Positions 7,006-49,291 of a DNA stretch of 64,000 nucleotides are shown here, piece after piece. The notes under the pieces were generated by a model. The model was given only the letters and a program-made list of their open reading frames with translations, was not told where the DNA came from and ran no database searches. Source of the DNA: Octopus vulgaris (taxonomy: Eukaryota); the NCBI GenBank assembly GCA_951406725.2, contig OX597834.1, positions 22,568,001-22,632,000 of the forward strand, given 5' to 3'. A program made the position numbers and the translations under genes. How positions within the stretch are numbered: position 1 is the stretch's first letter; each line of letters starts with the position of its first letter.

Positions 7006-8110
7006 GTTTCAAAATCTTCCACAAGGGCAGCCATTTGGAGGGAGGGGCCTAGTTGATTACATCGAGCCCAGTGTTTCACTGGTACTTATTGATCCCAAAA
7101 GGATGAAAGGCAAAGCTTACCTCGGTGGAATTTGAACTCAAGACATAGCAGTGGATGAAATACTGCTAAGCATTTCACCCAGTGTGCTAACGATTCTGCC
7201 AGCTCACCACCTTAATAATAATAATCCTTTCAACTGTTGGAAAAAGGCCTAAAATCTTGGAGGAGGGGATAAGTTGATCACATCAACCCAAGTACTTGAC
7301 TGGTACTTATTTTATCGACCCAGAAAGGATGAAAGGCAAAGTCAACCTCGGCAGAATTTGAACTCAGAACATAACAGCAGACAAAATACCGCTAAGCAAT
7401 TTGCCCAGCATGCTAATGATTCTGCCAGCTTGCTGCCATAATAATAATAATACAATGATGGAAAATGCTTTACCTCCATCGATGGGTTTGCTAATTGAGT
7501 ATGTTGTATATGGAATGTCTTCATCACGCTGGGATCGCAGACTGCTGCCTGGGGCACCAGCTGGAAGGCTACTTTGTTCAGAGCCCATCCAGTTCCCTAA
7601 ATTCAGAAAGAAAAAAAATGGAAATGACAAATATACATAATTACATTTTTCTTTTTACAAACAGTAACTAGTCAGATGTTTTATTATAACAATAATAATA
7701 ATATTAGTTTCAAATTTTGCTACAAGGCCAGCAACTTTTCAGACGAACGTGTAAGTTGATTACATCAACCCCAGCATTCAATTGCAAAAGGATGAAAGAC
7801 AAGCTGACCCATGTGGGATTTGAACTCGCAACATATTGAGCCAGAACAAATGCTGCTAAAGCCTTATTGTCTGATGACTAACAATTCTGCCAGTTTACTA
7901 TCTTAGCAATAATTTATGCACATAGCTGACAATTTTGTGAGGAGAAAGTTAATTACATTGATCCCAGTACTTGGCCAATATTTTCTTTTACAGAGCCTGA
8001 AAGAATGAAAGGAAAAGTCTACCTAGGAAGGAGTTAAACTCAAAATGTAAAAGAGCAGGAAGAAATAGCCCAAGGTATACTGAGAATAAGGTGAGCTATG
8101 CAAGGAGCCA
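7004..8110 (-). mobile_element. Cluster of four family-A SINE copies
   Basis: Repeated reverse-complement CORE (GGATGAAAGGCAAAG..ACCTCGG..GAATTTGAACTC) at about 7085, 7326, 7789 and 8000, separated by (AAT)n. Confidence 0.8.
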
Positions 8111-8885: not shown

Positions 8886-11800
8886 ATACTTCAAATATTT
8901 ACTGATAATGCTTACTCAGTGGTCACAGAAAATGGCAATCCTTCGATATTGGTACACGACGTCATCCTCCCCTTACAACTTTCCCTCATGACATGGATAA
9001 AGAGGCTGGGCTGAAAAAGAGGGTGAATGACGTCGTCTCTTTACACTGACCCTCTGTACACGAACCCTGAAGGAATGCCAAAAAATATATCAACTATTCT
9101 GATATATAGAATATATAGAAGTTTTGTGGAGCTGACAGCATCGTTATAGCATCAGAAAAAACGCTTTACTGTATTTGTTCCGACTCGTTGCATTCTGACC
9201 TCAGATCTTACTCGGGTCCACTTTGCTTTGAATTCTCTCGGAGTCGATATAACTTTATTTTATAGTACCAATCAAGAAATGGGATCCATGGTGTCGACTA
9301 GCCCCACTCACCTGAAATTTACTGGTCTTCTGCCGAAATCAGAAACCATTATTGTTACACATTCATATCTATGTGTATACGTTTGACACTATTTTATTAG
9401 TAAACAGTACTAACTGTGCCAAAAGTGTGGATGTATTCTACACACGTATACCTACGTATACACGTAGATATGAATGTGAAACAATTATATTTGAAATTCA
9501 AACGCGCTGGGATTAAAATTAAATATTTAGTTAGACAGTGCTTACGAAGTCTGAAATATGTGATTATTCTATTTACAAAACTTACACCAATGTCGTATTA
9601 TTTATATTTGAAATTCTAAATAGAGTGGAATTTTACGAGAGGTGATTATCCCAAATGGGCTGAGGTTACTTGAGTTGCAAAAAAATATAACAGACTACAT
9701 CAATGAATTTCACAATTTAAGGAAGATGGACAATGAAGGAATGATTAAAATAATAACAGCATTTAGTGGAGAAAAGTAGAAACGTTTTGTTCGTTCTTTG
9801 TACATTTGGCCTTGTGTTTCCGCGTTGAAGTCGACAACGAGATGTAAATAACACCGTTAGGAAATTTTGAGGGGTTTTTTGGGGAGGGGGGGGGGGGCAT
9901 AAAAATTACAAAACCAAGATATTTCCCAAAGTAAAATATTTTTCATAACCAACCCTAATTCGTTATTTTAAGAACCTTTGGTAAAATATAGAAATATAGC
10001 GAAATGAAGGATTTGTTATGTGAAAGTGCGTCATCACTAAAAGACTAAATGAATGACAGGCAATAATTAGACTCAAATAATGAAGATAATTATATGGATA
10101 TTATGATAACGTTAAATATCAAGAAGTAAATACTTACCGAAACAAATACACCTTTAGTCTTTAAAATACAAATAGAATAACTATATATATGTATATATAT
10201 ACATACACAGAGTAACTTATACACACATGCAGTAAAACTATATCTATATATACACACAGTAACTATATATACTTATTTATATATATATAAATATACAGTA
10301 ATTGTATATACACACACAGTTACTATATATATATAAATTTATATATACACGGTAACTATATATATATGTGTGTGTATATACACACAGTCAATATCAGATG
10401 ATTCTTGAAGCCTCCATTAATAACTCTCTAAAATAGAAGATATGAAATCAACAACAGTTTGTGTAAACAACTCATTGATGTACATTTTCGTACTCTTCGC
10501 ATAAAAGAGTACTTCCAGTAGCAATCACGTCCGTAATTAGCGAAAACATATGAAATAGATCAAATAAACAACAGTTATAAATTCTTGTACATAAGTATAA
10601 ATATATATAATTCCTTGGATACTCTTGGATTTACGGAATGCCGGATACCAAGGAAATATCCGTTCAACTTAGCCTTAACCGATAATCCGAACGGTTTGTT
10701 TACCTGAGTTTTTCGAGTTTTCTGTCTTACCAGATCACGCAATGTGCTTTGCAGTTGATTTGCCTTGATCTATTTAACTTGATCCTCTTATCTTTCTATC
10801 TACTAGATATTATATATTTATAAATTAGATTTTTCTATATTAATATAAGATATTTATATTTCCTTCTTGGGGGTACTTTTAGTGTAAGGGAAATAACTCT
10901 AAAAGCCTGCATAGCGTTGCCTCCCCCTCTTCCTCACCCCACACACACATGCTCTAAAAGTTTCTTTTCGAGACCCCATGCACGACCTAGTTTAATAGGA
11001 ATATCGTAGATTGATTCAAAAAAAACTTTAGCCTTTAAAATATAAACAGAAAAAGTTTCCATTTATACAGAGTAATTTTCAAAGGATTGTCGAAACTTCC
11101 TTTAATAACTCTTTAAAATAGAAGATAATAAAACAACTTATTTACAATTTTTTTTCTCCCTATAAAAGTGTCTTTCTATGGTTATATTCGGAAACCCACC
11201 TAGAACTAAATAGAATATGTGGAAAACTGCAGCTAAATAGGTCACAAATTCTTATATATAAGTATTTTAATATATATCGAAATATACATAGAACCCCACC
11301 AAATATCCGACAAGCTTCTGACCGGAAGTGGCCCATATTTCTCTTGTTTCCCAATTTCTGGAAAGTCTAAATGTAAATGTAAAATATGAAATAAGCTAGG
11401 AAAGTAAAGAACTAAATTGCATTTAACATATTCAAATAAATATGCATCTAACGCAGGATCTGTTTGATATCTATTAAACCAGTTAATTTTTTTTTATATA
11501 TATCATATTGTACCATGTATAAAAGCTTACAAAATGAAAATTAAATGAAGAAAAGTAAAGAACATGATTTTATTTAACAGATACAAACTAATACGCTTCT
11601 AAAGCAGAGTATGTTTAATGTTTATCAATCCACATTAAATCTAAACTATTGTTAACATTCCGTATGCAAATGAACGAACTTCTACAACATGTCCTGTTTA
11701 TTTAATACAGGGTGCAGTAAGTTGCGTGATATTGCACGGTATTATCAGATTTCTGGAAGTTCCGGTGTTTTGAAAGCCAGATTTGTGGTCCGGCACTCAA

Positions 11801-12021
11801 TTTTCTTTCCTGTTTAATTATTGATAAGGGAGGTAACTCTAAATGTCTTTGTATTATCCCTTTTTGTCAAGCACTTACCGAAAACTTATCGTTCTCAACA
11901 CTCACGTGTAATACATATTTTGTGGATAGTTTCAGGCTGATACGTACCATCACAGATTTTCTCAAACTTCATTGATTTTCTTCCATGTTTCCGTAGACTT
12001 GTATCATCTTGGTTCGGCACT

Positions 12022-13074
12022 ATGGAACTGGAGAATTCGAAAATTTCAACAGAGAAAGAAACTTACCGACGTAAATTAGACTTATTATTAAATATCCACG
12101 AGAGATTACGCCAACAAAAACAAGAACTAATTGATAAAAATAAGCGCTTACGTGAAAAAACTGCACCTTTGAGAATGGACGTTAAATTACCCAATAATTC
12201 GCCTTCAACGCGCAAAATTTACAATTGTCTTAATGACATCTACGATCTGGAGTGTAAAATACACAATATTCGTCAAAAATATACCTTAAAAAAATATGAA
12301 AAAGAAAGAAATTTGAATTTACATTCTACTATGAGAATTTACCAAATTTGCAAAGAACTTTCCTTGAAAAATACTGCTGGCATGGAATTATCTGTCAGTG
12401 GAAAAAACGCTTGCGACGAACTTTCAACGGAAAATATTAACTGTAAGGAATTTCCTATCAGTGAAAAAACCGATTGTGATGAAAATTCTATCACAGAAAA
12501 AGACATTATTTTAGAAGAATTTTCTCCTAGTGAAAAAGATGTTTGTCAGGATCTTTCTTCCAGTGAAAAACAAGAATCTGAGAGACTTTCTCCCACCGAA
12601 AAAATTGGCGATGAACTTCCTGCCTCTGAAGAAAACGATTGCGAAGAATTTTATTCAATGGAAAAAACCGTTTGCAAAGAACTTTCTACAGATGAAAAGA
12701 ACATTTACGAAGAACTTTATGCCACTGAAAAATCCGATTGTGGAGAACTTTATACTAACGAAAAATACTTTTGTAATAAACTTCCTACCAATGAGAAAAA
12801 CGTTAGCGAAGAAATTCCTACCACTTCAACATTCGGTGACAAGGAATTTTCTTCTACAGAAAAACGGATTTGTGAGAAACTTTCTACCGAAGAAAAAGTC
12901 GTTTGTCAGGAAATTTTTACCACGGAAAAAAACGTTTGGGAGGATGATCTTGCAACAGAAAAACACGATTGCAATGAGCCTTCGACCAGTGAAAAACCAG
13001 TTTCCGAAGAAATTTCTACCACGGGGAAAAGTGTTTTCGAAGAACTTTCAACCACAGAAAAAAAGAGTTTATAA
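12022..13074 (+). CDS. Intronless hypothetical protein, 350 aa: coiled-coil-like N-terminus plus 22 acidic ~11-aa repeats
   Basis: 1053-nt stop-free frame in very AT-rich DNA, starting at ATG. Repeat units are 10, 11 or 12 aa (only frame-preserving length changes), consensus xEL[ST]xxEKxxC. Candidate acceptor (TTCCATGTTTCCGTAG, AG 11995-11996) lies 25 nt upstream of the ATG. ATTAAA at 13147-13152 is followed by a T-run. No family recognised. Confidence 0.7.
   Translation: MELENSKISTEKETYRRKLDLLLNIHERLRQQKQELIDKNKRLREKTAPLRMDVKLPNNSPSTRKIYNCLNDIYDLECKIHNIRQKYTLKKYEKERNLNLHSTMRIYQICKELSLKNTAGMELSVSGKNACDELSTENINCKEFPISEKTDCDENSITEKDIILEEFSPSEKDVCQDLSSSEKQESERLSPTEKIGDELPASEENDCEEFYSMEKTVCKELSTDEKNIYEELYATEKSDCGELYTNEKYFCNKLPTNEKNVSEEIPTTSTFGDKEFSSTEKRICEKLSTEEKVVCQEIFTTEKNVWEDDLATEKHDCNEPSTSEKPVSEEISTTGKSVFEELSTTEKKSL
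12352..13071 (+). repeat. Coding 33-bp tandem repeat, 22 diverged units
   Basis: Recurrent GAAGAA-TT/CT-TCT-ACC-x-GAAAAA pattern; aa 111-350 of the ORF parse into 22 units. Confidence 0.85.
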
Positions 13075-14964
13075 TCAAAATTTGTAGCATAAATTATAAT
13101 TTAATTTAAACCTTTTTGTACTTATGATTCGTGTATTTTATTCCTTATTAAAAAACAAGTTTCTTTTTTTTTTTTTACCAGTTTGCTGTCGATTTTGTTG
13201 CTGTGATAAGAAGGACGCGTCAAAAATAGTCGCTTTTTAAGTCAGGTTTTAAATAGTTTGCCACGATCTTCCTTTTTGTCCCCGTTTCATTTTTTGGGAG
13301 AAAGATATTTTCAGACTGAAACCAAAGATTTAACTAGTAAACTAATTAGAATTTTCAAACTTATTTTGTTTACGATTTCAAAGTAGAACTCCCGACTAAC
13401 CCATGCATGTTTGCATATACACACACATGCACGCTGGCATAGCCAGATGGTAAAAAAGCTTTCCTTTGCAACCATGAAGTCCTGGCTTTGGTCCTTCTGC
13501 ATGTCAATAGACTTGAGTCAACCCAAACCTGTATAGAAGCCCGCCCATCAAATACGCTTAAGTATAATTGCCACAATGTAATACTGATTCAACAGATGAA
13601 TTACGTTGTGATTTTCGTAGCATGAAAAACTACATCTGTAGAAATTTGGTGAACATGCAATGGGGGTGTCTACCATATGAGGCAGAAAAGCCATCATCAC
13701 AACCTCCATCTAACTAAAACTTAAGTATTTACCCCCAGATGCAACAGTGCCTGTTACTCAGGGATTGGTTTACGTAGCAACATAAGGACTTGCTACTCTT
13801 TCTCATGGTCTTTGGACTACAAAGAACTGCCATCACACACACACACATATATATACATATACTCCACAGCAGAAGTGGTAAAACTGATCTTTCTTGTAGT
13901 GTAAAGCACTCATGGTGGTGCCACATAAAAGCGCCCATGTGATGTCACGTAAAAACGCCTGTGCAGAGCCTTGTAAAAGTGACTCAAGGTCTGAGGGTTT
14001 CATGCATTGGCACTTATCTAAGTGCCCTTCAGTCACTCTGTTGCTTCTGCTAAATATATATATATGCATGTATGTATTTTTATACAAATATATATATATA
14101 TTTATGTGTGTGTTTATATATACATACAGGCGTCCACATGCACCTATGGCTGTGTCAGATAATAAAAGATACCTTGTGGTATTTGGCTGCATCACATTCA
14201 CTTGAGTGCAAATCACATTGAGATTGGGTGGCAAAAGGCCACCCAACCGACTGGTATAAAGTCACTCCAACCTCTGCTCTACAGATGTGCCGTCTCATCT
14301 CTCAGCCTCTTCCACTACTTCTGTAACAGGCACCCTGGGCTGCCAAGTTGTGATGATGGTATGAAACAAGGGAGTGGGTTCAGTCTATCACTCCCCGGCA
14401 GGTCACAGAGAGAGATTTGAACTCATAATGCAAGGGACCAGAATAAATACCACAAGGCACCTGGTCCAGTTTGTTAACAATTCCACAACCTTAGACTGGT
14501 ATTTTATGTATCAACCCCAGGAGGGCAAAAAGCAAAAGCTAACCTTGGTGGGATCTGAACTCGGAATGAAAGAAGCCAAAATATAAATACTGTAAAATAT
14601 TTTATCCAATGCCTTTGACATGTCTGCCAACTCCCCACCATCATCCCACCTGTTCCTGTATACCTGGTCTGATATTTCTACAACATACATAAAAATTCTG
14701 GACCACATCCAAAAGACCACCTCACTGATTGGCAAAAACTTACTTACCAAGATGCACAGCTTCCTCCTCCTCTTCCACCACCATCACTGCTAAATGACCC
14801 TCTATGTGGTCACTCAACCTGCTTAGAAATAGCAGCCAAATATCCTTCAAACAACACAGTTCAAGGTAGACAAGTAAACTACTGCTGTTAAACTTGTTTG
14901 AATTTTCAAAATATTTAGTTTGAACATTCATCTCTCCTGAACAAGATGCCCGTCTGTTGTGGGG

Positions 14965-16505
14965 TTAACCATTTTGACACCAACCCACCTCAGATCACCC
15001 CTGGTGCTGTGATACAAACTTTCTGCTTTAAAAAGTGGTCTATCTTAAAACCTTCCATCAAAATTTCATGTTGATTTATATTCAAAAGACCAGATTAAAT
15101 AATGACAAAGTTATTTTATTAAATTCTTCACTATTTTTCATAATTAATTGAAATAAGAACAGTATTTCAACAGAAATATTACAAAATAGTTAAGTGGATC
15201 CGTCTTTGCTTTTTAAGAATGGCAAACAGTTGAACCAGATCTGTGGTTCCCTGCCTTCCAACTTATCAGCTTAAGGATTTTGGTACCAACTTGCTTGAGA
15301 CTTCTCCTGGTTCTTTGATATAAATTTCCTGTTTTCAAGTGATCTCTATAGAAACCTTCCATCAAAATTTCGTGTTAATTTTTATTCTAAACTCCAGCTT
15401 AATAACGGCAAAGTTATTACATTAAATTCTTCGTTATTTTCTATAATTAATTGAAATAAAGACAGTGTATTTCAACAGAAATATGCTAACTGTAGGGTTA
15501 AGATAGTAAGTTAGAATTTGAGGGAGATTTGACTGCTATGTTTGAAGAATGTTATTATTGGGATCGCTTGTTATTAATGAGAAAACAAAATATAGATTAC
15601 ATTTATATAGGTTTTCTTTCTTCCTCACTATGGGGTTGGACAAGTTAAAAAAGTTTGAAAATCTTCTTAAACCTTTTGGTACCAATCCAACTGAGACCAC
15701 CTCTGGTGTTAGGATACAGACAACCTGTTTTAAAGGGATTTAAATTAAAATCAGCCACCAAAATTTCATGTTACTTTTTTTTCCAGATTCTGACTAAATT
15801 ATGACAAAGTTATTTTATTAAATTCTTCATTATTTTAAAAATGAATTGAAACTAATACAGTTTGTTTAAAAGAAATATGGTAAAAAAAGATTTAATATAT
15901 CAAGTTGGAATTCGAAACAGATTTAGCTTCTATATTTGTAGTTGTAATTGTTGAAATCTCTCTCTTGTTATTAATGATAAAACAAAATACAGATTGAATC
16001 CCTATAATTCTTCTGTTTTCCTTGCCATGGGTTGGATATGTTTATAAAGTTTAAAAACTATCTTAAACTTTTTGATACCAATCCAACTGAGACCACCAGC
16101 CCTGGTACTACGATACAAAACTTCTTGCTTTAAAGGGATCTAACTTAAAGCCTTCCATCTAATAATAATAATAATAATAATAATTGTGTACAGTGCTCAG
16201 GTGCACTACAACTCATCTAAAGTCTATATATAATCAGGTGTAGTTTCAGCGGATTTCGGAAAGCATGAGGGCCTTAAAGGATGCAGTGTCATCTAAATTT
16301 CATGTTCTAAATATCAGATTAATAACATACTAAACTCTTCATTATTTTAAAAATTAACTGGAATAAAATTAGTGTATTTCGGAAAAATATGGTAACAAAA
16401 GGATTAAGATAATGATTAGGGATTTGAGGGAGATTTGGCTGCTGTGTCTGTAGATTGTTGTTGAGACCCTTATTGTTATCAATAAAACTTTAAGTAAAGG
16501 GTTAA
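14965..16505. repeat. Array of four TTAA-flanked MITEs with homologous spacers
   Basis: MITEs at 14965-15193, 15271-15501, 15667-15895 and 16063-16407. Copies 2-4 start exactly 396 bp apart, and the spacers after copies 2, 3 and 4 align. Confidence 0.8.
16156..16296 (-). mobile_element. Short retroposon 3' end with (TTA)n tail and 7-bp TSD inside MITE copy 4
   Basis: CATCTAA at 16156-16162 and 16290-16296; the insert is absent from the other three MITE copies. Confidence 0.7.
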
Positions 16506-17247: not shown

Positions 17248-17775
17248 TGTGTCTGTGGAGTGCTCAGCCACTTGCATGTTAATTGCATGGACAGGCTGTT
17301 TGTTTGGTTGATCAAATCAACTGGAACATTCATCGTTGCGACTGACAGAGAACCAGTTATGATAATTGAAGAAAACAAGACAGTGCACTTAAACAGCCAA
17401 CAAACTTTTGGAAATCAAGAAAATTGTTTTGTTCTATTTTTTTTATTACTTTTCTTAGTAATCAAGGTTTAAAAACACAGTAATCATAGCTTCAGTAGAT
17501 TCTGAGATACCAGAATGTGCACTGAAGTATAATCAATTTGGACTTCTTGAGATACCAAAGTGGGGTTGCTAGCTTCTGTACTTTCTGAGACATACCAACC
17601 AAAGTGGACGGAGAAGAAATCAGTTTGGACGCCTTGGCTTCTGTGATAGCAGACTGGACACTGAAGTAATCAAGCAAGCAAACAACTCATGAGAAACTGT
17701 GGCACTTACTTTTTGGATGGTTGGGTATATTAGATGTGGTAAAGGTAGGTGGTATTGTGGGGCACACACAAAACA

Positions 17776-18069
17776 AAAAACAGAAAAGCACAATTATTTG
17801 GAACTTTACAAGCAGTATGGGAGAACATAGCACCAGAAGAATGTCACAATCTTGTGGAATCCATGCCAAGACGAATTATGGCAGTGATTAAAGCCAAACG
17901 TTTAAAGTTAAACATAGGAAGATCTGGGGAAGCTATATTTTGGAAATCCGTCAGCCCAATGGTTTCCCTTCATGGCAGAATTAATAGTCAAGACTATTTA
18001 AGCACTTTATCTGATCAAATTCATCCTCTGGTTGTGGAACTGTTTCTGAAGGGAAACACAATCTTTCAG
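17776..18069 (+). mobile_element. Tc1/mariner transposase remnants in swapped order
   Basis: 17776-17898 gives QLFGTLQAVWENIAPEECHNLVESMPRRIMAVIKAK (Tc1 C-terminus). 17926-18069 gives AIFWKSVSPMVSLHGRINSQDYLSTLSDQIHPLVVELFLKGNTIFQ (mid-DDE region), cut at FQ by a SINE. Confidence 0.85.
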
Positions 18070-19027
18070 CGGCTGTGTGGTAAGAAGCTTGCTTCCCACC
18101 TACATGGTTCCAGGTTCAACCCTGTTGCATGGCACCTTGGGCAAGTGTCTTCTACTATAGCCTCAGGCCAACCAAAGCCTTGTGAGTGGATTTGGTAGAT
18201 GAAAACTGAAAGAAGCCCATTGTATGTATATATATGTGTGTCTGTGTTTGTCCCCCACCACATCGCTTGACAACTGATGTTGGTGTGTTTATGTCCCCAT
18301 AAATAAGTGATAGGATAAGTACTAGGCTTACAAAGAATAAGTCCAGAGGTTGATTTCTTCATCTAAAAAGCAGTGCTCCAGCATGGCATCAGTCAAATGA
18401 CTGAAACAAGTAAAAGAATACACAGACACACACATACATATTTGTGAGTGTGAGTCTGTGCAGGAATGGCATTCCATGTGTCCTCATTAACACTGTTTCA
18501 GCGAGGAATGGTGCCTTCGTTTGCAATCTCCAATAATCAAAAGATTCTGTAGTGTCACCCTTTTGAAGTGTGAGGACCAGAAAAATGGAGAAAAAGAAAC
18601 AGAAAAAATTTTACTTACAAAAAAAGAAGAACATTGAGAAATAGAAAATTTGCCTCAACAAGTTTCATTTAATCCTTGCCAGCAGGTAAAAATGAATGTA
18701 AAATTAAATGATGTAGAGCCTAATTTGGAATTGTTGGATATGTTGGATGAGGTGGGAAAGAACAGGTAGTGGAGCACACATAGACACACTGAAAATGAAT
18801 ACAGAGTGCAGCAGAAAAACCTCCCGTCTTTTGCAGAGCCGTTGCTGTGGCACCAAGGAAGTTAAGCAGGTGATAGTGGTGTCTTCTTAAAGCTAATGTT
18901 TTACCATTATGTTTTCAGCCATCATCATGGTTTGGGTTGATGCACACTATGTGTTTGCTGTTGAAATGTTTATCAAGAAGGAATGATGAATATGGGAGGG
19001 ATTTTTTTGCCACACCCTGGACTATGA

Positions 19028-21910: not shown

Positions 21911-22972
21911 TTTACCTTTTAATTCCATCTGATCCATACAAGCATAGGAAAGGGGAAATTATAATGCTGCTGTTGCTGCTGATTGATGATTGATGATAAT
22001 GACAATAAAGTGTGTTATGAGGTTAGTTGAGCTGAACCTATCGTCCACAGTATATCGCAAGAACTTGTAATAAACTGTGTATGATTTATTTCCAAACAAA
22101 AGAAACGGAAACGGATTTGGTAGAATTATGAGAACAACAAACAAAATACCTTGTGGTCTTTAGTTTTGGCCATTTATGTTCTAAGTTCAATTCCTTCCAA
22201 GGTCGATTTTGCTTTGTTTTGCTTTTGTTGTTGTTTTTTTTTTCCTTTTTTTTATTTTTTTTTTTCATCATCCTTCTGGGATAGTCGATACGATAAAATA
22301 TTAATCAAGTTGTCAGGTTCTACAACAGTTTCGATATATTCTTACAATGCATCCTGGATGTAAATAGAATTATAAAGAAGACTAAGACCAAGTCAGCAAA
22401 AGTCACATCAGGCATCAATCAAATTCAGAAGAGAGTGAAGACGACTGACTACGCAGAGACATGGAGGTGTGGTTAACATGCTCGCATCCCAACTACATGG
22501 TTTCAGGTTCAGTCTCACACTGCACAGTACACTAGACAAATGCCTTCAATTACATCCCCGGGTCGATCAAAGCCTTGTACGTAGATTTTGTAGATGGAAA
22601 CTCAAAGAAGCCCAGTGTATCAACACACACACACATACATACACATATATATTTATATAAAATCTCATTTGTGAACCCATGAGAAACAAACCTCTACCAA
22701 CTGTTCTGCCTAATATGTCCATGCACACTTTTCGATGCAATGTATGCCAGAAAGTCTGTAAATCTATTGGAGGCCTCAAAAGACATTTTAAGATCCACAA
22801 AGATTAGTACTTAACTGCAGCTCTTGGTGGTCGGTCCAAATCAGATATGCAATCTATGCGGGTGTCTTTTCAACACATTGTCAGGTTTAAAAAGCCACAT
22901 CAGATGTCATGATGGTTCCAAGGTGTAGGTATAGGAGGTGGTCAAACTCTGCCTAAGGAGTAGACAACCACC

Positions 22973-23006
<34 letters not shown>

Positions 23007-25111: not shown

Positions 25112-25559
25112 CATATATATATATATATATAAAATCCAGCTTAGAGAAGAAGAAACCAAACCAAACCAAACGAATCGAATCGAATCATATATATATAGAT
25201 ATACACACATATATATATATATGTATACGTATGTATGTATGTATATATAGGTCATTCTCATAGTACCTGCAGTTAAGTGTTTTAGTACACTAACACTTCG
25301 TGTTTGATAGAGAGCAACAAATAACAACAACAAAAATATTAATAATTATAACAGTTATAATAATGATAATAATAATAATAATAATAATAAAAATAAAAAT
25401 AATAATAATAATAATAAATATTCTGCCCAGTTAATTAAGATCTTATAACGCAATCAGTGAAAATAAGAAGAATATAAATATATAATAAAACAAGAATGAT
25501 GTAATCATTTTCATATAGATACATAATGCCTTAACAGCAGTTTAATAATAGAATATAAT

Positions 25560-25598
<39 letters not shown>

Positions 25599-25765
25599 TA
25601 TATATATACATATACACACATATATATATATATATGCATATATACATATATATATGTATGTATGTATACTTATAGACGCACATACATATACACACACATG
25701 CACATACTCAAATACATGTCATTATATATTATGTTATAAATATGTATGGGCATATATATATGTGT

Positions 25766-25812
<47 letters not shown>

Positions 25813-25940
25813 GTGTGTGTATGTGTTTGTATATGTATATATGTGTGTGTGTGTATATCTATATACATATATATATGTCTATATACATATATATATATTT
25901 ATATATGTATATATATCTATATATGTGTGTATGTGTATGA

Positions 25941-25990
<50 letters not shown>

Positions 25991-26009
25991 ATATATGTGT
26001 GTATGTGTG

Positions 26010-26044
<35 letters not shown>

Positions 26045-26085
26045 CTATATATATCTATATATGTGTGTATGTGTATGAGTGTGTG

Positions 26086-26122
<37 letters not shown>

Positions 26123-26185: not shown

Positions 26186-26449
26186 TTATTTTTTCTTTTT
26201 CAGTTCCTCAAATCGTCTGGTGAGATCATCAAAATCCACATCTTCACCTGATTCTTGTACAGACGCATGGTTACCAATGTCTGGAAGAGTGTTTGAAGGA
26301 ACAGCTGGTAAGTCTGGGAACATATCGACTTGCTTTGGTTGGTTAGGTTGATTGATGACAAAGCCGATAGGTGCTGGTGGGTACTTGTTTTCTGAGGGCT
26401 TTGTTGGAATTCCAGATGGGACATTTTGATTAGCAGCAGATATCGATGC
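26186..26449 (-). CDS. IST1: IST1 homolog, terminal coding exon with MIT-interacting motifs
   Basis: Acceptor TTTTCACAG ends at 26450, phase 0, compatible with the upstream donor. Encodes ASISAAN...FPDLPAVP...VDFDDLTRRFEELKKKK*, i.e. a MIM2-like Pro motif and the C-terminal MIM1 typical of IST1. TAA stop at 26188-26186. Confidence 0.95.
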   Translation of the reverse strand, partial: ASISAANQNVPSGIPTKPSENKYPPAPIGFVINQPNQPKQVDMFPDLPAVPSNTLPDIGNHASVQESGEDVDFDDLTRRFEELKKKK

Positions 26450-26985
26450 CTGTGAAAATGAACAAAAAATATTCCTGTATGGGAAAGTGAGTTTTACAAT
26501 GATGATGATGATGATGATAATGACAATGATGATGGTGATGAAAATATACATTTAAATAGCTGTGAGATGGAAGGGTGAACTTACTGACCACATGGTCTTA
26601 AACCTACATCATAAGATACTCACACACACAAATCTATTTATCTATATGTATATGCATGTGTGTGTGTGTTTGTATATATGATAAAATGAATAGAAATGGC
26701 CTTTGCTGATAAATTTTCCACTTTAATAATTCGATGTTTATAAATTATTAGGTGTTTACAGAAAGTGACTTTGATAGGAGTTCCTTGCTTAAAAGCAGTT
26801 TTCAAATTGATATTTTAAAGTTTGTTAATCACTACTTAAAATAGAGAGTGTTTACAAACAAACATCACACACACACACACACACACAAACACACTAATAA
26901 CCTGGCATAGAACTCAATATACATATGTCTCAGGCTAATTTCATATTCTTTATCTACTCATCCATTTTGCAACAAGAATACTTAC

Positions 26986-27460
26986 GGCAGGATAATTGAA
27001 AGGAGATCCACAGGATTGAACCGGAGGAATCGTCGAGCCACCACCGCCACCACCACCACCACCACCAGATATGTTTCCGCCTGGCCGACCAAACATTTTG
27101 TCGTTCTTGTCCATGTCTGGGTGGTTCAAGTCAAAGTCAATCAAATTGTCTACGGAGCAACCTTCTTCAAACTGTGCCATTACTGAAGCATCCGGAACAA
27201 ATGGTACATTGTATGTCTTAGCAATCTCAATCATGTACCGTTCCACTAAAATTTTAGGCGGCGCCTGCACGCTGAGTTTGTGCATCACTTTCTCGCTGAC
27301 ATTATTAAGTGCGTTTGTCCGACATGCTTGTGCGAATTCCTTGCCATATTTTGCTCCAAACTGTTCAGAGATCTGTTTGAATTCTTGAATGTCACTCTGA
27401 AGTCGAGGTGTCACCCATATCAGACTTGCAATGGCTTCTTCAAGACCAGAATCTAATTCT
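26986..27460 (-). CDS. IST1: IST1 homolog (ESCRT-III-associated factor), penultimate coding exon
   Basis: Translates to (K)ELDSGLEEAIASLIWVTPRLQSDIQEFKQISEQFGAKYGKEFAQACRTNALNNVSEKVMHKLSVQAPPKILVERYMIEIAKTYNVPF...PFNYPA, closely matching the IST1 core as I recall it (ELDSGL..LIW..PRLQS, HKLSV.APPKILVERY.IEIAK.YNVP). Minus-strand acceptor TTTTTTTCAG ends at 27461 (phase 2). Donor GTAAGT starts at 26985 (phase 0). Exon length 475 nt. Confidence 0.95.
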
Positions 27461-27634
27461 CTGAAAAAAAAACAAAGAAACAATTCAATAGAAATACATG
27501 ACAGTGTGTGTGTGTGTGCATGCGTGTGCAAGAGAGACTCAAAATGTCAGACTTCGTTATGCAAAATGTCAGACTTCGTTATGCCAATTTTATACTGGGG
27601 TGACTTCAGTTATGACTGAGACACAAATATATCC

Positions 27635-27774: not shown

Positions 27775-27811
<37 letters not shown>

Positions 27812-27860
27812 ATATAATATAATATATAAATATAGATATATGCATATATACCTACATATA

Positions 27861-27896
<36 letters not shown>

Positions 27897-28262
27897 AAAT
27901 AAATATATGCATATATACCTACATATATGTACATACCTGTATGTATGTATGTATGTGTGTGTGTGTGTGTGTATGTATGTAAGTATGTATGTATGTATGT
28001 ATGGGTAGAGGACATAAAAGAAAACGTCAACAAATTGAGAAACGAGAACATAAAAAACAAAAACAAAGTAAACAACCTTTTTTTCAGACAACAAAAGAAA
28101 CAAATAGAGAAACAAGACAGGTAACATAAAGAACATTCCCTTCATCAGTTGTCCCCTGTTTTATCTACTCTGCATTTCGATGGTAGGGACAAGACGCGAC
28201 TTCGTTAAAACAGTCCTTCCCGTAAAGCAAATTAAATAAAATTTGGGATTTTTTGCGGAGGA

Positions 28263-32784: not shown

Positions 32785-35282
32785 TGCTGGTTTTGTGCAA
32801 GTGACACATTAAGTATCCAACTACATTGACAGCTTTTATTTATTTAGTTATTTATTTATTTATACCACACAAATGCAAAATTTTAAAATTGGTCTGAAAG
32901 CAGAACATGTCTAGAATTCTGGTTTCCATATAAATTTTCTGCTGTGTGTATAGCTGGAATTTTTTAATTAACTTTAGCAGGAAAAGACAAAAAAAAAACA
33001 AACAATAACAACAACAATAATAATAATGCTTCACTTCTCCAGAAATAGATTATTGGAATTCTTGGTGTGAATTCTAAATTAAATATAACAAATAGACACA
33101 TACATTGAAGATAAAATAAGCTAGGACTATAAAAAAAGAAGAGAAAAGGGGTCGGGGTGGTGGATATTCTTTGTTTTTGTGTCCCTTTTCAGAGATCAAG
33201 ATACCACAAGCTAATACTCATCTCAGATTTATTATAGACTCAAAGACCCTTAAACTCTTTTGATACCAGCCTGCCCACTTCCTGGCAAGTGGAAAGGAAG
33301 GACAGAAGAAAGACCCTCAAATTAGGGACCCTGGCCTGAATGCTTGCAAAACAGTGGACTCTCCTAAAGGCACCCAAGGTACCAGGGGTATGAAATGTTT
33401 TGACACTTATTTGGTGTTGGTGGTTCAATACGACCGCTCGGTTCAAAGTCTCTCTTGACCAGAAATGGCCTGAACTCTTTGTATGACCACCCTCCCTGTA
33501 CATAACTCCCTGTCCCCCTACATTGCCGTGCTTTTGCTTTTTGAGCCAATTGAATTGAATTGAATTGAATACTGACTTATTTGACATCAGAAGTTTTGAC
33601 CCTTCAGCAATGTCAAATGTCAAATATAATGCTTGTTTCTTCACATTGTTTTGAATTAAGCATGCAGTATCTTGTAACTTCAAAATTTCAATGATGTGAT
33701 TGTTTAGTTTTAGAATGACATTGTAGGATAGGCGTGAGAGGTCAGATCCGGCTGGTTTGAAGACGAAACAAGTAGAATATTTGGGCCAGATACGGCTGGT
33801 TTAAATGCAAATGGGTTAATGTTTCTCTTGTTCTCTTCCTCCATCTCTCTATGTCTGGGAGCATCTAGATACATTTGTACCTATAATATCTCTATTTTCC
33901 TCTCTCACTCTCTCTATGTATGTGTATATTTCTATGCATGCAGCTGTGTGTGTGTGTGTTTGCCACTAGTGCCAAAATATATTCTTTTTTATACTAGGCA
34001 CAAGGCCCGAAATTTGTGGGGAGGGAGCCACTCGATTAGATCGACCTCAGTATGCAACTGGTACTTAATTTATCAACCCCTGAAAGAATGAAAGGTAAAA
34101 ATTGACCTCAGCAGAATTTGAACTCAGAACGTAAAGATAGACGAAATACTGCTAAACCTTTTGCCCAGTGTGCTAATGTTTCTGCCAGCTTGCCGCCTCA
34201 GTGCCAAAATATAGTGTCACGTTGAATATCCAGAGACATCAGAGAGGCTTTGCCCCATGCAGAAACTGCAGGAGCTGCTCAGAGATTTTACAAGCTCTTC
34301 TTCTGAATCCATTGCAACGTCAGAAAGTCTTCTGTATCATTAGCAGACATCTCAGGATCACAAGTGGTTTGCCTCTCGTCCTGTACACATTGCCTGGGTG
34401 GGACAATGGGGACTGAATTAGTCTTTGCCTACAGAAGGATTCCACTTACATCCAATTTCTTTATTAGCCACAAGGGCCCAAACATAGAGGGGGACAATAC
34501 AGCCTGATTGGGGTCAGACACACAATGATTATATGACTTTTAAAAATTTTACAAAATATAATGAAATCGAATGAGATACAACAAGGACGAAATAAAAACA
34601 TGAGACGAAGCAGAGAGATGGCTTACGCTCCAACCCCACGAGCCCACCTTCAGCTGGTTTCAGCTGCCATTTCTGTCCCCTTGATGGCTGAGATTTTAAA
34701 TTGAAATCATGGGTACTGAGTACACACACACACACTAAACTAAACTAGACAAACAAATACACTGAGAGAAACACACAGACGCTGTTTACGTAATCAGAAT
34801 TACTGGCACTTTAGAAAACTGAACCAATTTTGGTTGGATTGGGTCCTCATTGCTGCTATTCCATTCATATTTGGTTAATGCCTCACAATAAATCCTTTAT
34901 GCTGCTTCTTTCTCTCTATCATTATCTCTGAATGCCAGACTACTCATATCATCACACACACACCTATATATACTTCTTCCATTGCATGCACTTAATTAGT
35001 TATCCGAAATGCTTCACACTTTCCATTTCCAGCCCTTCGAATATATCTATACTACACAAGGCAATTAACTGTTTAAATCATAACACCCCCACCCCCAGCC
35101 ATATACAATTGCAATCCCTCACACACACACGCGCGCGCGTGCGCGCCTTTGCCACTGCCACCACCACAACGACCAATTCCCTTCAGGGTCCCTTTAGTAA
35201 ATTAATCAACAAAATGGCTGAATACATGAAGTTCACTGAAGCAGAAATCTCAGTAAATGCAGCACGCACAGACAGACAGACA

Positions 35283-35327
<45 letters not shown>

Positions 35328-35399
35328 TAGCACATTACCCAAACAGAGATTAACAGCAACAGTAAACACAACACTCTCTCTTATATTTGCATCTATGTT

Positions 35400-36280
35400 T
35401 GCGTGTGTGTGTGTGGGGGGGGAAATCATTACATGTGTGTGTGTGTATGTGGCCATCATTTTGTGTGTGTTTGTGCGTGTGTGTATATGGCTGTGTATGT
35501 GGGCATCGTTTTGTGTATGTGTGTGTATATGTCTGCATGTGTATGTGAGCATCATTTTGTGTGTGTTTATATGTGTGTATATGTCAGTGTATATGGGCAT
35601 CATTTTGTGTGTGTTTGTGTGTGTGTATATGACTGTGTATGTGGGCATTGTTTTGTGTATGTGTGTGTATATGTCTGCGTGTGTATGTGAGCATCATTTT
35701 ATGTGTGTTTGTATGTGTGTATATGTCTGTGTATGTAGGCATCGTTTTGTGTATGTGTGTATATGTCTGCATGTGTATGTGGGCATCATTGTGTGCGTGT
35801 ATGTGTGGGGGGGAATCATTACATGTGTGTGTGTGTATGTGTGTATATATGTGTGCATGTGGGCACCATTTTGTGTGTGTTTGTATGTGTGTATATGTCT
35901 GTGTATGTAGGCATCGTTTTGTGTATGTGTATATGTCTGCATGTGTATGTGGGCATCATTGTGTGTGTGTGTGGGGGGGAATCATTACATGTGTGTGTGT
36001 ATGTGTGTATATATGTCTGCGTGTGCATGTGGGCACCATTTTGTGTGTGTTTGTATGTGTGTATATGTCTGTGTATGTAGGCATCGTTTTGTGTATGTGT
36101 GTATATGTATGCATGTGTATGTGGGCATCATTGTGTGTGTGTGTGCATGTATGTGTGTATATATGACTGCATGTATATGTGAGCCTCATTTTGTATGTGT
36201 GTGTCTGCGTGTGTATATGGGCATCATTTTATGTGTGTGCGTGTGCACGTAGAGGTGTGTGTGCATGTCTATTTTATATG
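35400..36280. repeat. TG-rich ~46-bp minisatellite with higher-order structure
   Basis: G(G/A)GCATC(A/G)TT(T/G) anchors about every 46 bp; a ~170-bp three-unit block repeats in the distal half. Confidence 0.85.
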
Positions 36281-48526: not shown

Positions 48527-48750
48527 CTTTACTGCCCACAAGGGGCTAAACATAGAGGGGACAAACAAGGACAGACGAAGGGATTGAGTCGATTATATCA
48601 ACCCCAGTGCGAAACTGGTACTTTATTTATCGATCCCGAAAGGATACAAGGCAAAGTTGACCTCGGCGGAATTTGAACTCAGAACGTAACGACAGACAAA
48701 ATACCGCTAAGCATTTCGCCCGGCGCGCTAACGTATCTGCCAGCTCGCCT
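48527..48750 (-). mobile_element. Family-A SINE, young copy
   Basis: Near-consensus head, CORE and tail with CpGs retained. Confidence 0.85.
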
Positions 48751-49100
48751 ATATATATATATATATATGCATACACACACACACATATATATATACACAC
48801 GCATACGCATACATATATGAATGTATATGAGTGTGTTTGTGTCTCCTTGTCTTGACATTGTGTGTAAGATGCAAATGAGTGCCATCATCATCCATTTCCA
48901 ATATTCTGCAAAATCATGTCTGGTCATGGGGAAATATATCACCTTGCTTGGTAACAGGTGAGGGTCAGTGACAGGAAGAGCATCGGGCTGTAGAAAATCT
49001 ACCCCAAATAAATTCTGTCCGACCCATTCAAGCATGGAGAAGTGGCCATTTAAATGAAGGTTCTGATGCTGATTATGATTACAATTTTCACACTCATACA

Positions 49101-49291
49101 TTACTCTTTTACTTGTTTCAGTCATTTGACAGTGGCCATGCTGGAGCACCGCCTTTAATCAAGCAACTCGACCCCGGGACTTATTCTTTTGTAAGCCCAG
49201 TACTTATTCTATCGGTCTCTTTTGCCGAACCGCTAAGTAACGGGGACATAAACACACCAGCATCAGTTGTCAAGCAATGCCAGGGGGACAA

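What the first reader, a model, noticed from the sequence alone, without database searches (positions are those of the whole stretch)
12022..13074. Orphan intronless protein with 22 acidic, Cys-punctuated 11-residue repeats
Seen: about 110 aa of Lys/Arg/Glu/Leu-rich coiled-coil-like sequence, then 22 units of xEL[ST]xxEKxxC, 11 of which end in Cys. Units are highly diverged yet never break frame. There is a candidate 5'-UTR acceptor and a poly(A) signal. Inference: a lineage-specific gene under coding constraint, built by 33-bp repeat expansion. The basic head, acidic S/T-rich tail and periodic Cys suggest a structural, cross-linked or metal-binding role (for example germline). I do not recognise a family.
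Basis: partly seen in the sequence, partly recalled or inferred. Interest (0 to 1): 0.7.

Follow-up and report, generated by a model that had tools for sequence, protein, structure and literature searches.

The report
Octopod-only zipper-head, acidic-repeat-tail gene
This is a real single-exon gene, found so far only in octopuses and the argonaut, that encodes a protein with a conserved leucine-zipper-like helical head and a fast-evolving acidic tail of 11-residue repeats; its function is unknown, and its evenly spaced cysteines are not conserved and so are probably not its key feature.

Summary
Window 12022-13074 (+) is a 350-aa ORF with a basic helical head (aa 1-112) and 22 in-frame units with consensus ELSTTEKNVCE, 11 of them carrying Cys.

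It is a real gene, single-copy in a 2.8-Gb Octopus genome. It lies head-to-head with BORCS5 and tail-to-tail with IST1. The same arrangement holds an intact ortholog in three other genomes:
- Octopus sinensis: a called 350-aa single-exon gene; 5/1053 nt differ against 2.1% in the flanks (P=1e-5).
- O. bimaculoides: only the last codons are visible beside a run of N.
- Argonauta hians: an uncalled 295-aa ORF.

Between Octopus and Argonauta the head is 73% identical, with differences by codon position 23/13/46 and dN/dS 0.08-0.28. The Leu heptad (22/29/36/43/50) is invariant. The tail keeps only its composition (pI 4.3, about 21% S+T). Its 33-nt periodicity is strong in Octopus (z=14) and faint in Argonauta (z about 3).

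Only 1 of 11 tail Cys aligns with a Cys in Argonauta. There is no signal peptide and no CxC or CxxC, so the cross-linking or metal-binding idea is weak.

No Pfam, PDB or Foldseek relative was found, no paralog, and nothing at the cuttlefish locus. Expression and function were not testable here.

The parts
12022..13074 (+). Complete single-exon coding sequence, 350 codons plus TAA; A at -3 and G at +4 around the ATG
   Evidence: Single-copy in the genome. The O. sinensis ortholog is a called 350-aa gene that differs at 5 nt and has no indel. Argonauta has an intact ortholog.
12025..12174 (+). Head helix 1 (aa 2-51): leucine-zipper-like heptad I8-Y15-L22-L29-L36-L43-L50, with N40 at an 'a' position
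   Evidence: AF2 head model, pLDDT 91-96 over aa 11-40. The heptad residues are invariant in Argonauta.
12175..12201 (+). Loop between the two helices (aa 52-60), with a conserved S60-P61
   Evidence: AF2 shows no secondary structure at aa 52-60 and low pLDDT. S60 and P61 are invariant.
12202..12378 (+). Head helix 2 (aa 61-119), holding the most conserved block DIYDLECKIHNIRQ and RIYQIC
   Evidence: AF2 head model, pLDDT 83-94. Invariant columns. Head dN/dS 0.08-0.28, differences by codon position 23/13/46.
12352..13071 (+). Acidic Ser/Thr-rich tail (aa 111-350): 22 units of about 11 residues, consensus ELSTTEKNVCE; 11 Cys at unit position 10; predicted mostly disordered
   Evidence: AF2 pLDDT is below 50 over most of it. 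Against O. sinensis there are 3 nonsynonymous differences where 12.2 are expected (P=0.002).
12599..12825 (+). Youngest part of the array: higher-order period of 99 bp (3 units), 2.3 copies at 72% identity
   Evidence: TRF. Sliding lag-99 identity reaches 0.62-0.73 here against 0.30-0.36 at the 5' end of the array.
12649..12681 (+). Unit EFYSMEKTVCK (aa 210-220): the best conserved tail segment between Octopus and Argonauta (F210 Y211 S212 M213 K215 T216 K219 E220), a candidate short linear motif
   Evidence: Invariant columns of alignment A1.
11972..11996 (+). Candidate 3' splice acceptor (pyrimidine tract plus AG) 25 nt before the ATG; unverified
   Evidence: Sequence. Identical in O. sinensis but with no counterpart in Argonauta. 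No transcript data.
13147..13152 (+). ATTAAA, a possible poly(A) signal 72 nt after the stop; unverified
   Evidence: Kept in O. sinensis and O. bimaculoides. No AATAAA or ATTAAA within 400 nt in Argonauta.
11400..11790 (.). Interspersed repeat copy ending about 230 bp before the ATG (context, not part of the gene's coding sequence)
   Evidence: At least 40 copies in the genome at 70-79% identity, all matching query positions 1 to about 390 only.
7466..7588 (-). Neighbour: exon 1 of BORCS5 (LOH12CR1), head-to-head with the ORF; 4.4 kb between the ATGs
   Evidence: tblastx to Argonauta exon 1, 95% aa identity. Further exons lie left of the window (PF10158). The arrangement is the same in O. sinensis and Argonauta.
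26189..27462 (-). Neighbour: last two coding exons of IST1, tail-to-tail with the ORF, 13 kb away
   Evidence: tblastn with O. sinensis IST1. 98% identity to O. sinensis IST1.

Best explanation
It is a genuine protein-coding gene, single-exon in its coding part, and so far seen only in incirrate octopods (Octopus and Argonauta). It encodes an intracellular two-part protein.

The N-terminal 112-120 residues form two long helices. The first is a leucine-zipper-type heptad repeat. This head evolves under purifying selection. I infer that it is the specific working part, used for dimerisation and/or docking to a partner.

The remaining two thirds is an acidic, Ser/Thr-rich and probably disordered tail. 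It arose from a 33-bp (11-residue) tandem array. Part of it is old enough to align unit for unit with Argonauta. It was then extended in the Octopus lineage, including a 99-bp three-unit duplication.

Selection on the tail preserves the reading frame, the length and the bulk properties (charge, S/T content), but not individual residues. The tail therefore most likely acts through multivalent, low-specificity electrostatic or phospho-dependent contacts, or as a spacer carried by a dimeric head.

The periodic Cys is a remnant of the founding unit, not a conserved functional site.

Shown here: gene reality, synteny, constraint, helical head, composition-conserved tail.
Inferred only: dimerisation, disorder, intracellular location, mode of action.
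For: Real and unique:
- The 350-aa ORF is the longest open frame in the window.
- It has one copy in the 2.8-Gb genome at protein and DNA level and no head paralog.

Conserved synteny BORCS5 <-> ORF -> <- IST1:
- Seen in the window, in O. sinensis and in Argonauta hians.
- O. sinensis: a gene with exactly this kind of product (350 aa, single exon) is on record. It shows 5/1053 nt differences and no indel against 2.13% mismatches and 3.3 gap openings per kb in 4.5 kb of flanks (P=1e-5). Nonsynonymous differences are 4 against 18 expected (P=8e-5); in the tail alone, 3 against 12.2 (P=0.002).
- Argonauta: an intact 295-aa ORF. The chance of its 186-codon non-repetitive tail staying open is 3e-6.
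- Head: 73% aa identity, differences by codon position 23/13/46, dN/dS 0.08 (NG86) to 0.28 (YN00).
- Only frame 0 is open in all three species.
- O. bimaculoides: the last 7 codons plus TAA are identical at the edge of a run of N.

Structure and composition:
- Helices at aa 2-51 and 61-119, pLDDT 83.8 for the head alone; the tail is mostly below 50.
- The heptad I8/Y15/L22/L29/L36/L43/L50 is invariant.
- Head pI is 9.4-9.7. Tail pI is 4.3, S+T 21% and D+E 23-25% in both genera, despite about 30% tail identity.
- No hydrophobic N-terminus or transmembrane stretch; the highest 19-residue Kyte-Doolittle mean is 0.2.

Array history:
- 33-nt periodicity gives z=14 in Octopus and z=2.6-3.3 in Argonauta.
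- There is a gradient of unit similarity along the array and a 99-bp higher-order period.
Against: - UTRs, promoter and tissue are unknown.
- dN/dS between the two Octopus species is about 1 (4 nonsynonymous to 1 synonymous), though from 5 changes only.
- Among units, third codon positions vary no more than first and second (entropy 1.05/1.00/1.06). Per-residue constraint on the tail is therefore weak, and part of the frame conservation could come from array homogenisation.
- The alignment behind the structure model has only 3 sequences. A low pLDDT in the tail is not proof of disorder.
- [ST]xx[DE] sites are no more frequent than the composition gives (14 against 13.0), so phospho-regulation is a guess.
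- Dimerisation is inferred from heptads only.
- The restriction to octopods rests on one negative cuttlefish locus and on protein libraries from which close relatives seem to be missing.
Confidence: 0.6

Rival explanations
1. The tail is a structural or metal-binding polymer whose periodic Cys, flanked by acidic residues, form disulfide cross-links or bind metal ions, for example in the germline.
For: There are 11 Cys at the same unit position, spaced at multiples of about 11 residues. Most sit in D/V-C-E/D/K contexts, in a strongly acidic tail.
Against: Only 1 of 11 tail Cys (C240) aligns with a Cys in Argonauta, and Argonauta's other tail Cys sit elsewhere. Eleven of the 22 units lack Cys at that position, most through a single-base change from TGY. 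Cys makes up 4.6% of the tail, with no CxC, CxxC or CC. There is no signal peptide or transmembrane stretch, so the protein should sit in a reducing compartment. Nothing bears on the germline.
Confidence: 0.1
2. The 11-residue units fold, on binding, into 11/3 amphipathic helices that coat a lipid surface or a partner. This is how the 11-mer repeats of perilipins (33-mers in perilipin 4), alpha-synuclein, apolipoproteins and group-3 LEA proteins work.
For: The period is 11 residues, with a 33-residue higher order in part of the array. Hydrophobic positions 2, 9 and 10 fall within 65-164 degrees on an 11/3 wheel, with a moment of 0.75 per residue. AF2 draws helices at aa 205-241 and 275-313, at low confidence.
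Against: The conserved Glu at unit position 6 sits at 131 degrees, in the middle of that face. The tail has net charge -33 and 8 prolines. The periodicity is almost gone in Argonauta. There is no Pfam match to Perilipin, Synuclein, Apolipoprotein or LEA families. The comparison with those families rests on memory, not on a test.
Confidence: 0.1
3. The ORF is only the last or main coding exon of a larger gene, with coding exons upstream, so that the 350-aa protein is incomplete.
For: The frame is open for 27 codons before the ATG. A pyrimidine tract plus AG lies 25 nt upstream, identical in O. sinensis.
Against: The O. sinensis record calls exactly the 350-aa single-exon product. The ATG is conserved with a good context in Argonauta, where an in-frame stop lies 5 codons upstream and no acceptor aligns. 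Nothing coding was found between BORCS5 exon 1 and the ORF, which is mostly interspersed repeats. A non-coding 5' exon remains possible.
Confidence: 0.07
4. It is not a functional gene: a minisatellite-derived or transposon-derived open frame that is open by chance and was annotated by a gene predictor.
For: Two of the three forward frames are open across much of the array. There is no third-position excess among units, no homolog in large protein libraries and no expression data. An interspersed repeat lies 230 bp upstream.
Against: The gene is single-copy. It is syntenic and intact in Argonauta, with a third-position excess in the head and dN/dS 0.08-0.28. It is 4.5-fold less diverged than its flanks between Octopus species (P=1e-5) and has no indel. 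P for no stop is 0.0009-0.006 in the array and 3e-6 in the Argonauta tail. The interspersed repeat stops before the ORF.
Confidence: 0.03

Closest known systems
Taxonomically restricted ('orphan') genes of cephalopods that encode tandem-repeat, low-complexity proteins, as a general kind
   Same: It has no detectable family, is confined to one clade, has a single coding exon, and carries a repeat array that expands and turns over quickly while a short unique domain is conserved.
   Different: This is not a family in the sequence sense, so it says nothing about function. Here, orthology across genera and purifying selection are shown, which many listed orphans lack.
Leucine-zipper coiled-coil dimerisation modules (as in bZIP factors and many scaffold proteins)
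   Same: Five consecutive Leu at heptad 'd' positions (22-50), an Asn at an 'a' position (N40), and a long uninterrupted helix predicted with high confidence.
   Different: There is no basic DNA-binding region before the zipper, which starts 7 residues after the N-terminus. No bZIP Pfam match was found. A second long helix follows that could pack back as a hairpin.
Proteins with a dimerising helix and a long polyacidic tail that bind basic partners, such as SET/NAP-type and nucleoplasmin-type histone chaperones and the HMGB acidic tail
   Same: A basic or neutral structured part followed by a long acidic, Ser/Thr-rich, probably disordered tail whose composition rather than sequence is conserved.
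   Different: There is no sequence or fold match and no NAP or nucleoplasmin core. The tail is mixed E/K/S/T rather than pure D/E runs; only Argonauta ends in a poly-D stretch. The resemblance is recalled from memory and was not tested.
11-mer repeat amphipathic-helix proteins (perilipin 4 33-mers, alpha-synuclein, apolipoproteins, group-3 LEA)
   Same: An 11-residue period with a 33-residue higher order, and hydrophobic residues recurring at fixed unit positions.
   Different: A conserved Glu lies in the middle of the would-be hydrophobic face. The tail is strongly negative, has several prolines, and matches none of these families.
P0002 (UniParc UPI0004EA9D07; 11-residue ELPTKNKSIIK repeats) and P0003 (mucin-2-like, Liolophura sinensis)
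   Same: These are the only library hits (E=2e-11 and 5e-5). They are tandem repeats of similar period and S/T/K/E/P-rich composition.
   Different: The matches are repeat against repeat only, at 25-30% identity. Nothing matches the head, and the rest of the architecture differs. I take them as convergent low-complexity similarity.

Membership tests
bZIP transcription factors | Basic DNA-binding region (N-x7-R/K signature, about 16 basic-rich residues) directly N-terminal of the zipper | tested here: not met
   Only 7-21 residues precede the heptads (MELENSKISTEKETYRRKLDL), with no such signature.
bZIP transcription factors | Match to Pfam bZIP models | tested here: not met
   No bZIP family is listed even at E<=10.
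bZIP transcription factors | Leu at every seventh position over at least 4 heptads | tested here: met
   L22, L29, L36, L43 and L50, invariant in Argonauta.
Transposon or retroelement ORF | Multiple copies in the genome | tested here: not met
   One protein match and one DNA match for the ORF in 2.8 Gb. Only the stretch 11400-11790 upstream is repeated.
Transposon or retroelement ORF | Transposase, RT, integrase or gag-like domain | tested here: not met
   No Pfam match above noise.
Cys-rich metal-binding proteins (metallothionein-like) | High Cys content with CxC, CxxC or CC clusters | tested here: not met
   Cys is 4.6% of the tail, with no CxC, CxxC or CC; spacing is 10-33 residues.
Cys-rich metal-binding proteins (metallothionein-like) | Conservation of the Cys positions among orthologs | tested here: not met
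   1 of 11 tail Cys aligns with a Cys in Argonauta. The tail alignment is uncertain.
Secreted acidic phosphoproteins (SCPP/SIBLING-like, Fam20C S-x-E substrates) | N-terminal signal peptide | tested here: not met
   The first 25 residues have mean Kyte-Doolittle -0.8 (Octopus) and -1.4 (Argonauta), with no hydrophobic stretch anywhere. No dedicated signal-peptide predictor was available.
11-mer amphipathic-helix repeat proteins (perilipin, synuclein, apolipoprotein, LEA3) | 11-residue periodicity | tested here: met
   Lag-11 aa identity is 0.31 against 0.04-0.13 at neighbouring lags; lag-33 nt z=14.
11-mer amphipathic-helix repeat proteins (perilipin, synuclein, apolipoprotein, LEA3) | Continuous apolar face on the 11/3 wheel | tested here: inconclusive
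   Positions 2, 9 and 10 cluster at 65-164 degrees, but the conserved Glu at position 6 lies at 131 degrees.
11-mer amphipathic-helix repeat proteins (perilipin, synuclein, apolipoprotein, LEA3) | Sequence match to the families' Pfam models | tested here: not met
   None listed.
Acidic-tail histone chaperones (NAP/SET, nucleoplasmin) | NAP or nucleoplasmin core domain | tested here: not met
   No Pfam, PDB-sequence or Foldseek match.
Acidic-tail histone chaperones (NAP/SET, nucleoplasmin) | Binding of histones or other basic proteins by the acidic tail | not testable with these tools
   Needs pull-down or ITC with recombinant protein.

The most novel reading that the evidence does not exclude
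The gene arose de novo or by radical divergence in the octopod stem lineage. Its zipper head would then define a new protein family, and its expandable 11-residue acidic, Cys-bearing tail would be an octopod-specific functional material or regulator, for example a redox- or cation-responsive multivalent scaffold in a lineage-specific tissue such as sucker, skin or germline. Repeat number and Cys content would be tuned by selection in Octopus.
Probability: 0.08. Interest if true: 0.6.

Novelty: new member of a known kind. Interest (0 to 1): 0.35.

Why it matters
Cephalopod genomes hold many clade-restricted genes whose reality and role are mostly untested. This one has unusually clean evidence of being real: conserved synteny, an intact frame across genera, and purifying selection on a well-defined helical head. 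It is also a tidy example of a protein that pairs a conserved docking or dimerising module with a repeat tail evolving by unit duplication under compositional constraint.

It is missed by gene calling in Argonauta and hidden by a run of N in the O. bimaculoides record. Simple annotation-based orphan counts would therefore misjudge its distribution. Beyond that it is an ordinary uncharacterised gene, and its importance depends entirely on a function that is still unknown.

Tried and rejected
1. Family assignment. Pfam on the full protein, both heads and the Argonauta protein gave only sub-threshold noise (MbeB_N, WhiA_N, UPF0449, HBM and others, all below their cut-offs and inconsistent between species). 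A profile against PDB sequences gave 0 hits at E<=10. Foldseek of the head model against the PDB gave 0 hits.

2. Large protein libraries. The word-indexed search found nothing. Exhaustive phmmer found only three repeat-against-repeat hits. I first read this as 'not annotated anywhere'. That was wrong: an O. sinensis gene with this product is on record although its sequence is 'not in the collection'. Close relatives are evidently absent from those libraries.

3. Transposon ORF: rejected on copy number.

4. Dual coding in frame +1 (190 aa open in Octopus): rejected, because there are 6 stops in the Argonauta tail and no Pfam match.

5. Enrichment of CK2-type sites: not above composition.

6. 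Other molluscs. Patella and Pecten have different neighbours of BORCS5, so synteny gives no candidate ancestor gene.

7. Cuttlefish locus (76 kb around BORCS5, 27 kb upstream of exon 1): the head HMM finds nothing (best E=0.49).

8. Profile search of the window's own genome is not supported. The head protein at E<=10 found no paralog.

9. Literature. A search for a head peptide string gave 0 papers. A topical search gave only general context.

10. Rfam and tRNA scans of the window found nothing.

11. My impression that 17749-18198 (+) is a Tc1/mariner fragment was not confirmed by Pfam.
Full report
**1. What is in the sequence**

Window 12022-13074 (+) is an ATG-to-TAA frame of 350 codons. Its stop-to-stop frame (11941-13074, 377 codons) is the longest in the 64-kb window. 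Most other long frames are artefacts of (TA)n and (CA)n microsatellites. With the window's base composition, about 1e-8 such frames are expected by chance.

The first 110-112 residues are non-repetitive and rich in L, K, R, E and N, with net charge +10. The remaining 238-240 residues are rich in E, S, K and T, with net charge -33.

The tail tiles into 22 units with consensus ELSTTEKNVCE. Eighteen units have 11 residues, three internal units have 10, 12 and 10 (3-bp indels only), and the last is cut short. All 11 tail Cys occupy unit position 10. Units are 73% identical to the consensus and 59% to each other.

**2. Is the open frame more than chance?**

Two forward frames are open over most of the array, because the unit has no stop in either. 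An open frame alone therefore says little. Among units, the three codon positions vary equally (entropy 1.05/1.00/1.06), so the units themselves show no protein-type constraint.

Simulations do discriminate. Starting from 22 consensus units mutated to the observed level, or shuffling the observed columns among units, gives 6.5 or 3.1 stops in frame 0. P(no stop) is 0.0009 or 0.006. The two stops seen in frame +1 fit expectation.

**3. Where the window comes from**

The window is contig 21, 22,568,001-22,632,000, of a 2.8-Gb genome in 227 contigs. Two neighbouring genes identify it:
- IST1: last coding exons at 26189-27462 on the minus strand, 98% identical to Octopus sinensis IST1 and 78% to Argonauta hians.
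- BORCS5/LOH12CR1: exon 1 at 7588-7466 on the minus strand, with further exons just left of the window.

The species is an Octopus very close to O. sinensis. I suspect O. vulgaris from the genome size, but that is inference only.

The ORF is single-copy at protein and DNA level, and the head has no paralog. Only the stretch 11400-11790, which ends about 230 bp before the ATG, is an interspersed repeat, with at least 40 copies at 70-79% identity. A transposon ORF is excluded.

**4. Orthologs found through synteny**

The protein libraries gave nothing for the head, so I used the neighbours as anchors.

- *Argonauta hians.* The IST1 locus (L013) has a tblastn match to aa 6-229 (E=7e-56, 48% identity). 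It sits in the same place and orientation, between IST1 and BORCS5. It is an intact, uncalled ORF of 295 aa, L013:23410-24294 (-), with an in-frame stop 5 codons before its ATG.
- *O. sinensis.* The BORCS5 locus (L016) carries a called single-exon gene of exactly 350 aa at the orthologous place. It is 98.9% identical in protein, with 5 nt differences and no indel.
- *O. bimaculoides.* A run of 1411 N stands exactly where window 11676-13051 would align. At its edge, the last seven codons and the TAA are identical to the window. I cannot tell whether the N run is an assembly gap or withheld sequence.
- *Cuttlefish (Acanthosepion pharaonis).* The locus covers 76 kb, including 27 kb upstream of BORCS5 exon 1. 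It has no match to a head HMM (best E=0.49).
- *Patella and Pecten.* BORCS5 has other neighbours.

A caution about the libraries: the O. sinensis protein is on record as a gene product, yet it is 'not in the collection' and was not returned. The empty searches therefore do not show that the gene is unannotated or absent in close relatives.

**5. Selection**

*Octopus against Argonauta.*

| Region | Codons | aa identity | Differences by codon position | dN/dS |
|---|---|---|---|---|
| Head | 109 | 73% | 23/13/46 | 0.08 (NG86) to 0.28 (YN00); dS near saturation |
| Tail | 169 | about 30% (poorly aligned) | 82/75/103 | 0.41 (NG86) |

The Argonauta tail is almost non-repetitive but stays open for 186 codons (P=3e-6). 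Frame 0 is the only frame open in all three species.

*Window against O. sinensis.*
- The ORF differs at 0.47% of sites. The 4.5 kb of flanks differ at 2.13% (Poisson P=1e-5; Fisher P=6e-5).
- Nonsynonymous changes number 4 against 18 expected at the flank rate (P=8e-5). In the tail alone they number 3 against 12.2 (P=0.002).
- Synonymous changes number 1 against 4.4 expected (P=0.07).
- There is no indel, against 3.5 gap openings expected (P=0.03).
- The direct dN/dS is 0.97, but it rests on five changes.

Together these results show a translated gene with a strongly constrained head. The tail is constrained in frame, length and composition.

**6. Anatomy of the protein**

AlphaFold2 on the three-sequence alignment gives two long helices, aa 2-51 and 61-119/122. 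For the head alone, mean pLDDT is 83.8, with 91-96 over aa 11-40. Most of the tail scores below 50.

Helix 1 carries I8-Y15-L22-L29-L36-L43-L50 at heptad spacing, with N40 at an 'a' position. All of these are invariant in Argonauta. The best conserved blocks are KETYRRKLD, LRQQKQEL, EKTAPLR, DIYDLECKIHNIRQ and RIYQIC.

Bulk properties are the same in both genera. Head pI is 9.4-9.7. The tail has pI 4.3, S+T 21% and D+E 23-25%. There is no hydrophobic N-terminus and no membrane-spanning stretch, so I infer an intracellular protein.

In the tail, the conserved islands are FPSE, SSS.KQ.E.E.LSP and FYSM.KT..KE. They look like short linear motifs.

**7. History of the array**

The 33-nt periodicity is very strong in Octopus (lag-33 identity 0.58, z=14) and faint in Argonauta (0.35-0.37, z=2.6-3.3). 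Octopus units 6-10 align unit for unit with Argonauta, so several units predate the split.

Within Octopus, similarity between neighbouring units rises from 0.44-0.55 at the 5' end of the array to 0.6-0.73 in the middle and 3' part. A 99-bp higher-order period lies at 12599-12825. The last seven or so Octopus units have no counterpart in Argonauta, whose tail ends in a poly-D/N run.

The array was therefore extended, or kept more regular, in the Octopus lineage. The count of 22 units is identical in the window and in O. sinensis.

**8. The cysteines**

Of the 11 tail Cys, one (C240) aligns with a Cys in Argonauta. The four other tail Cys of Argonauta sit at other columns. Units without Cys carry S, Y, F, W, G, D or L codons at that position, most of them one base away from TGY. 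There is no CxC, CxxC or CC, and Cys is 4.6% of the tail.

With no signal peptide, stable disulfides are unlikely. The periodic Cys is best read as inherited from the founding unit and eroding, not as the key to function. Two of the three head Cys (C78, C110) are conserved.

**9. What it most likely does**

Shown here:
- a real, clade-restricted gene;
- a constrained helical head with zipper heptads;
- a composition-constrained, probably disordered acidic repeat tail.

Inferred only:
- the head dimerises and/or docks to a specific partner;
- the tail works through bulk properties, such as multivalent electrostatic contacts with basic partners or cations, possibly modulated by phosphorylation, or as a spacer.

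[ST]xx[DE] sites are not enriched beyond composition, so phosphorylation is only a possibility.

An 11/3 amphipathic-helix reading of the units is not excluded but is unattractive. A conserved Glu lies in the apolar face, the net charge is -33, there are prolines, and the periodicity is lost in Argonauta.

**10. Comparison and novelty**

There is no Pfam, PDB-sequence or Foldseek relative. It is not a bZIP protein (no basic region, no model match). It is not a metallothionein-like protein, not a secreted acidic phosphoprotein and not a transposon ORF (see the membership tests).

It belongs to the familiar kind of taxonomically restricted genes that encode repeat proteins, and a sister species already has a gene model for it. 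What this work adds:
- the orthology to Argonauta, where it is not called as a gene;
- the evidence of selection;
- the zipper head;
- the argument against the Cys-based reading.

Interest is moderate to low unless expression or function links it to an octopod novelty.

**11. Gene signals that remain open**

The pyrimidine tract plus AG at 11972-11996 and the ATTAAA at 13147-13152 are conserved among Octopus species. At about 2% divergence that means little, and neither has a counterpart in Argonauta.

The ATG context (A at -3, G at +4) is shared by both genera. The 2 kb after the stop are less diverged (1.0%) than the other flanks (2.9-3.4%). That could mark a long 3' UTR.

Noticed in passing
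L017:5033-6443 (O. bimaculoides CM046621.1), corresponding to window 11676-13051: A run of 1411 N replaces almost exactly the ortholog of this ORF plus 346 bp upstream. The flanks align on both sides, and the last 7 codons plus stop are visible and identical. It could be an assembly gap at a tandem repeat or a withheld stretch.
   Followed up: partly
L016:4593-5645 / L019:3001-4053 (O. sinensis): A gene with exactly this 350-aa product is on record in the gene-position index, yet the sequence is 'not in the collection' and was not returned by either large protein search. Close relatives of the window seem to be missing from those libraries, so 'no hit' there is not evidence of absence.
   Followed up: yes
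window 11400-11790: Copy of an interspersed repeat with at least 40 copies across many chromosomes at 70-79% identity. It ends about 230 bp before the ATG and is shared with O. sinensis and O. bimaculoides. Its family and left boundary were not determined.
   Followed up: partly
window 13075-15074: The 2 kb downstream of the stop differ from O. sinensis by only 1.0%, against 2.9% further downstream and 3.4% upstream. This may be a long 3' UTR or another conserved element.
   Followed up: no
window 12515-13087 (+), frame +1 of the array: A second open frame of 190 aa (basic, F/L/K-rich, periodic) overlaps the tail. It is a by-product of a unit without stops in that frame. It has 6 stops in Argonauta and no Pfam match.
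   Followed up: yes
window 12022-13074 against L016: Synonymous differences to O. sinensis are fewer than the flank rate predicts (1 against 4.4; P=0.07). This is not significant but runs in the direction of constraint on silent sites.
   Followed up: partly
L018 (Acanthosepion pharaonis CAHIKZ030001433.1), 10001-66536: The cuttlefish BORCS5 model is 308 aa and spans 56 kb, while the conserved exon 1 (MGSEQS...) lies at 27445-27561. The model probably has spurious or fused 5' exons.
   Followed up: no
L013:21754-22680 (+) and 22598-23005 (-) (Argonauta hians): Just downstream of the Argonauta ortholog lie a 308-aa open frame with reverse-transcriptase motifs (partly called as a gene, RVT_1 weak) and a minisatellite that translates as SGYHTEWISH repeats.
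   Followed up: no
window 25552-26119, 27776-28141, 35250-36252 and elsewhere: Long (TA)n, (CA)n and related microsatellite tracts produce many spurious open frames of 120-217 aa ([18 protein letters not shown]) on both strands.
   Followed up: no
window 48682-49158 (-): An open frame inside an IST1 intron has a weak, sub-threshold match to the Mg transporter NIPA family (E=0.002, 17.7 bits against a cut-off of 26.2). It is probably noise or a decayed fragment.
   Followed up: no
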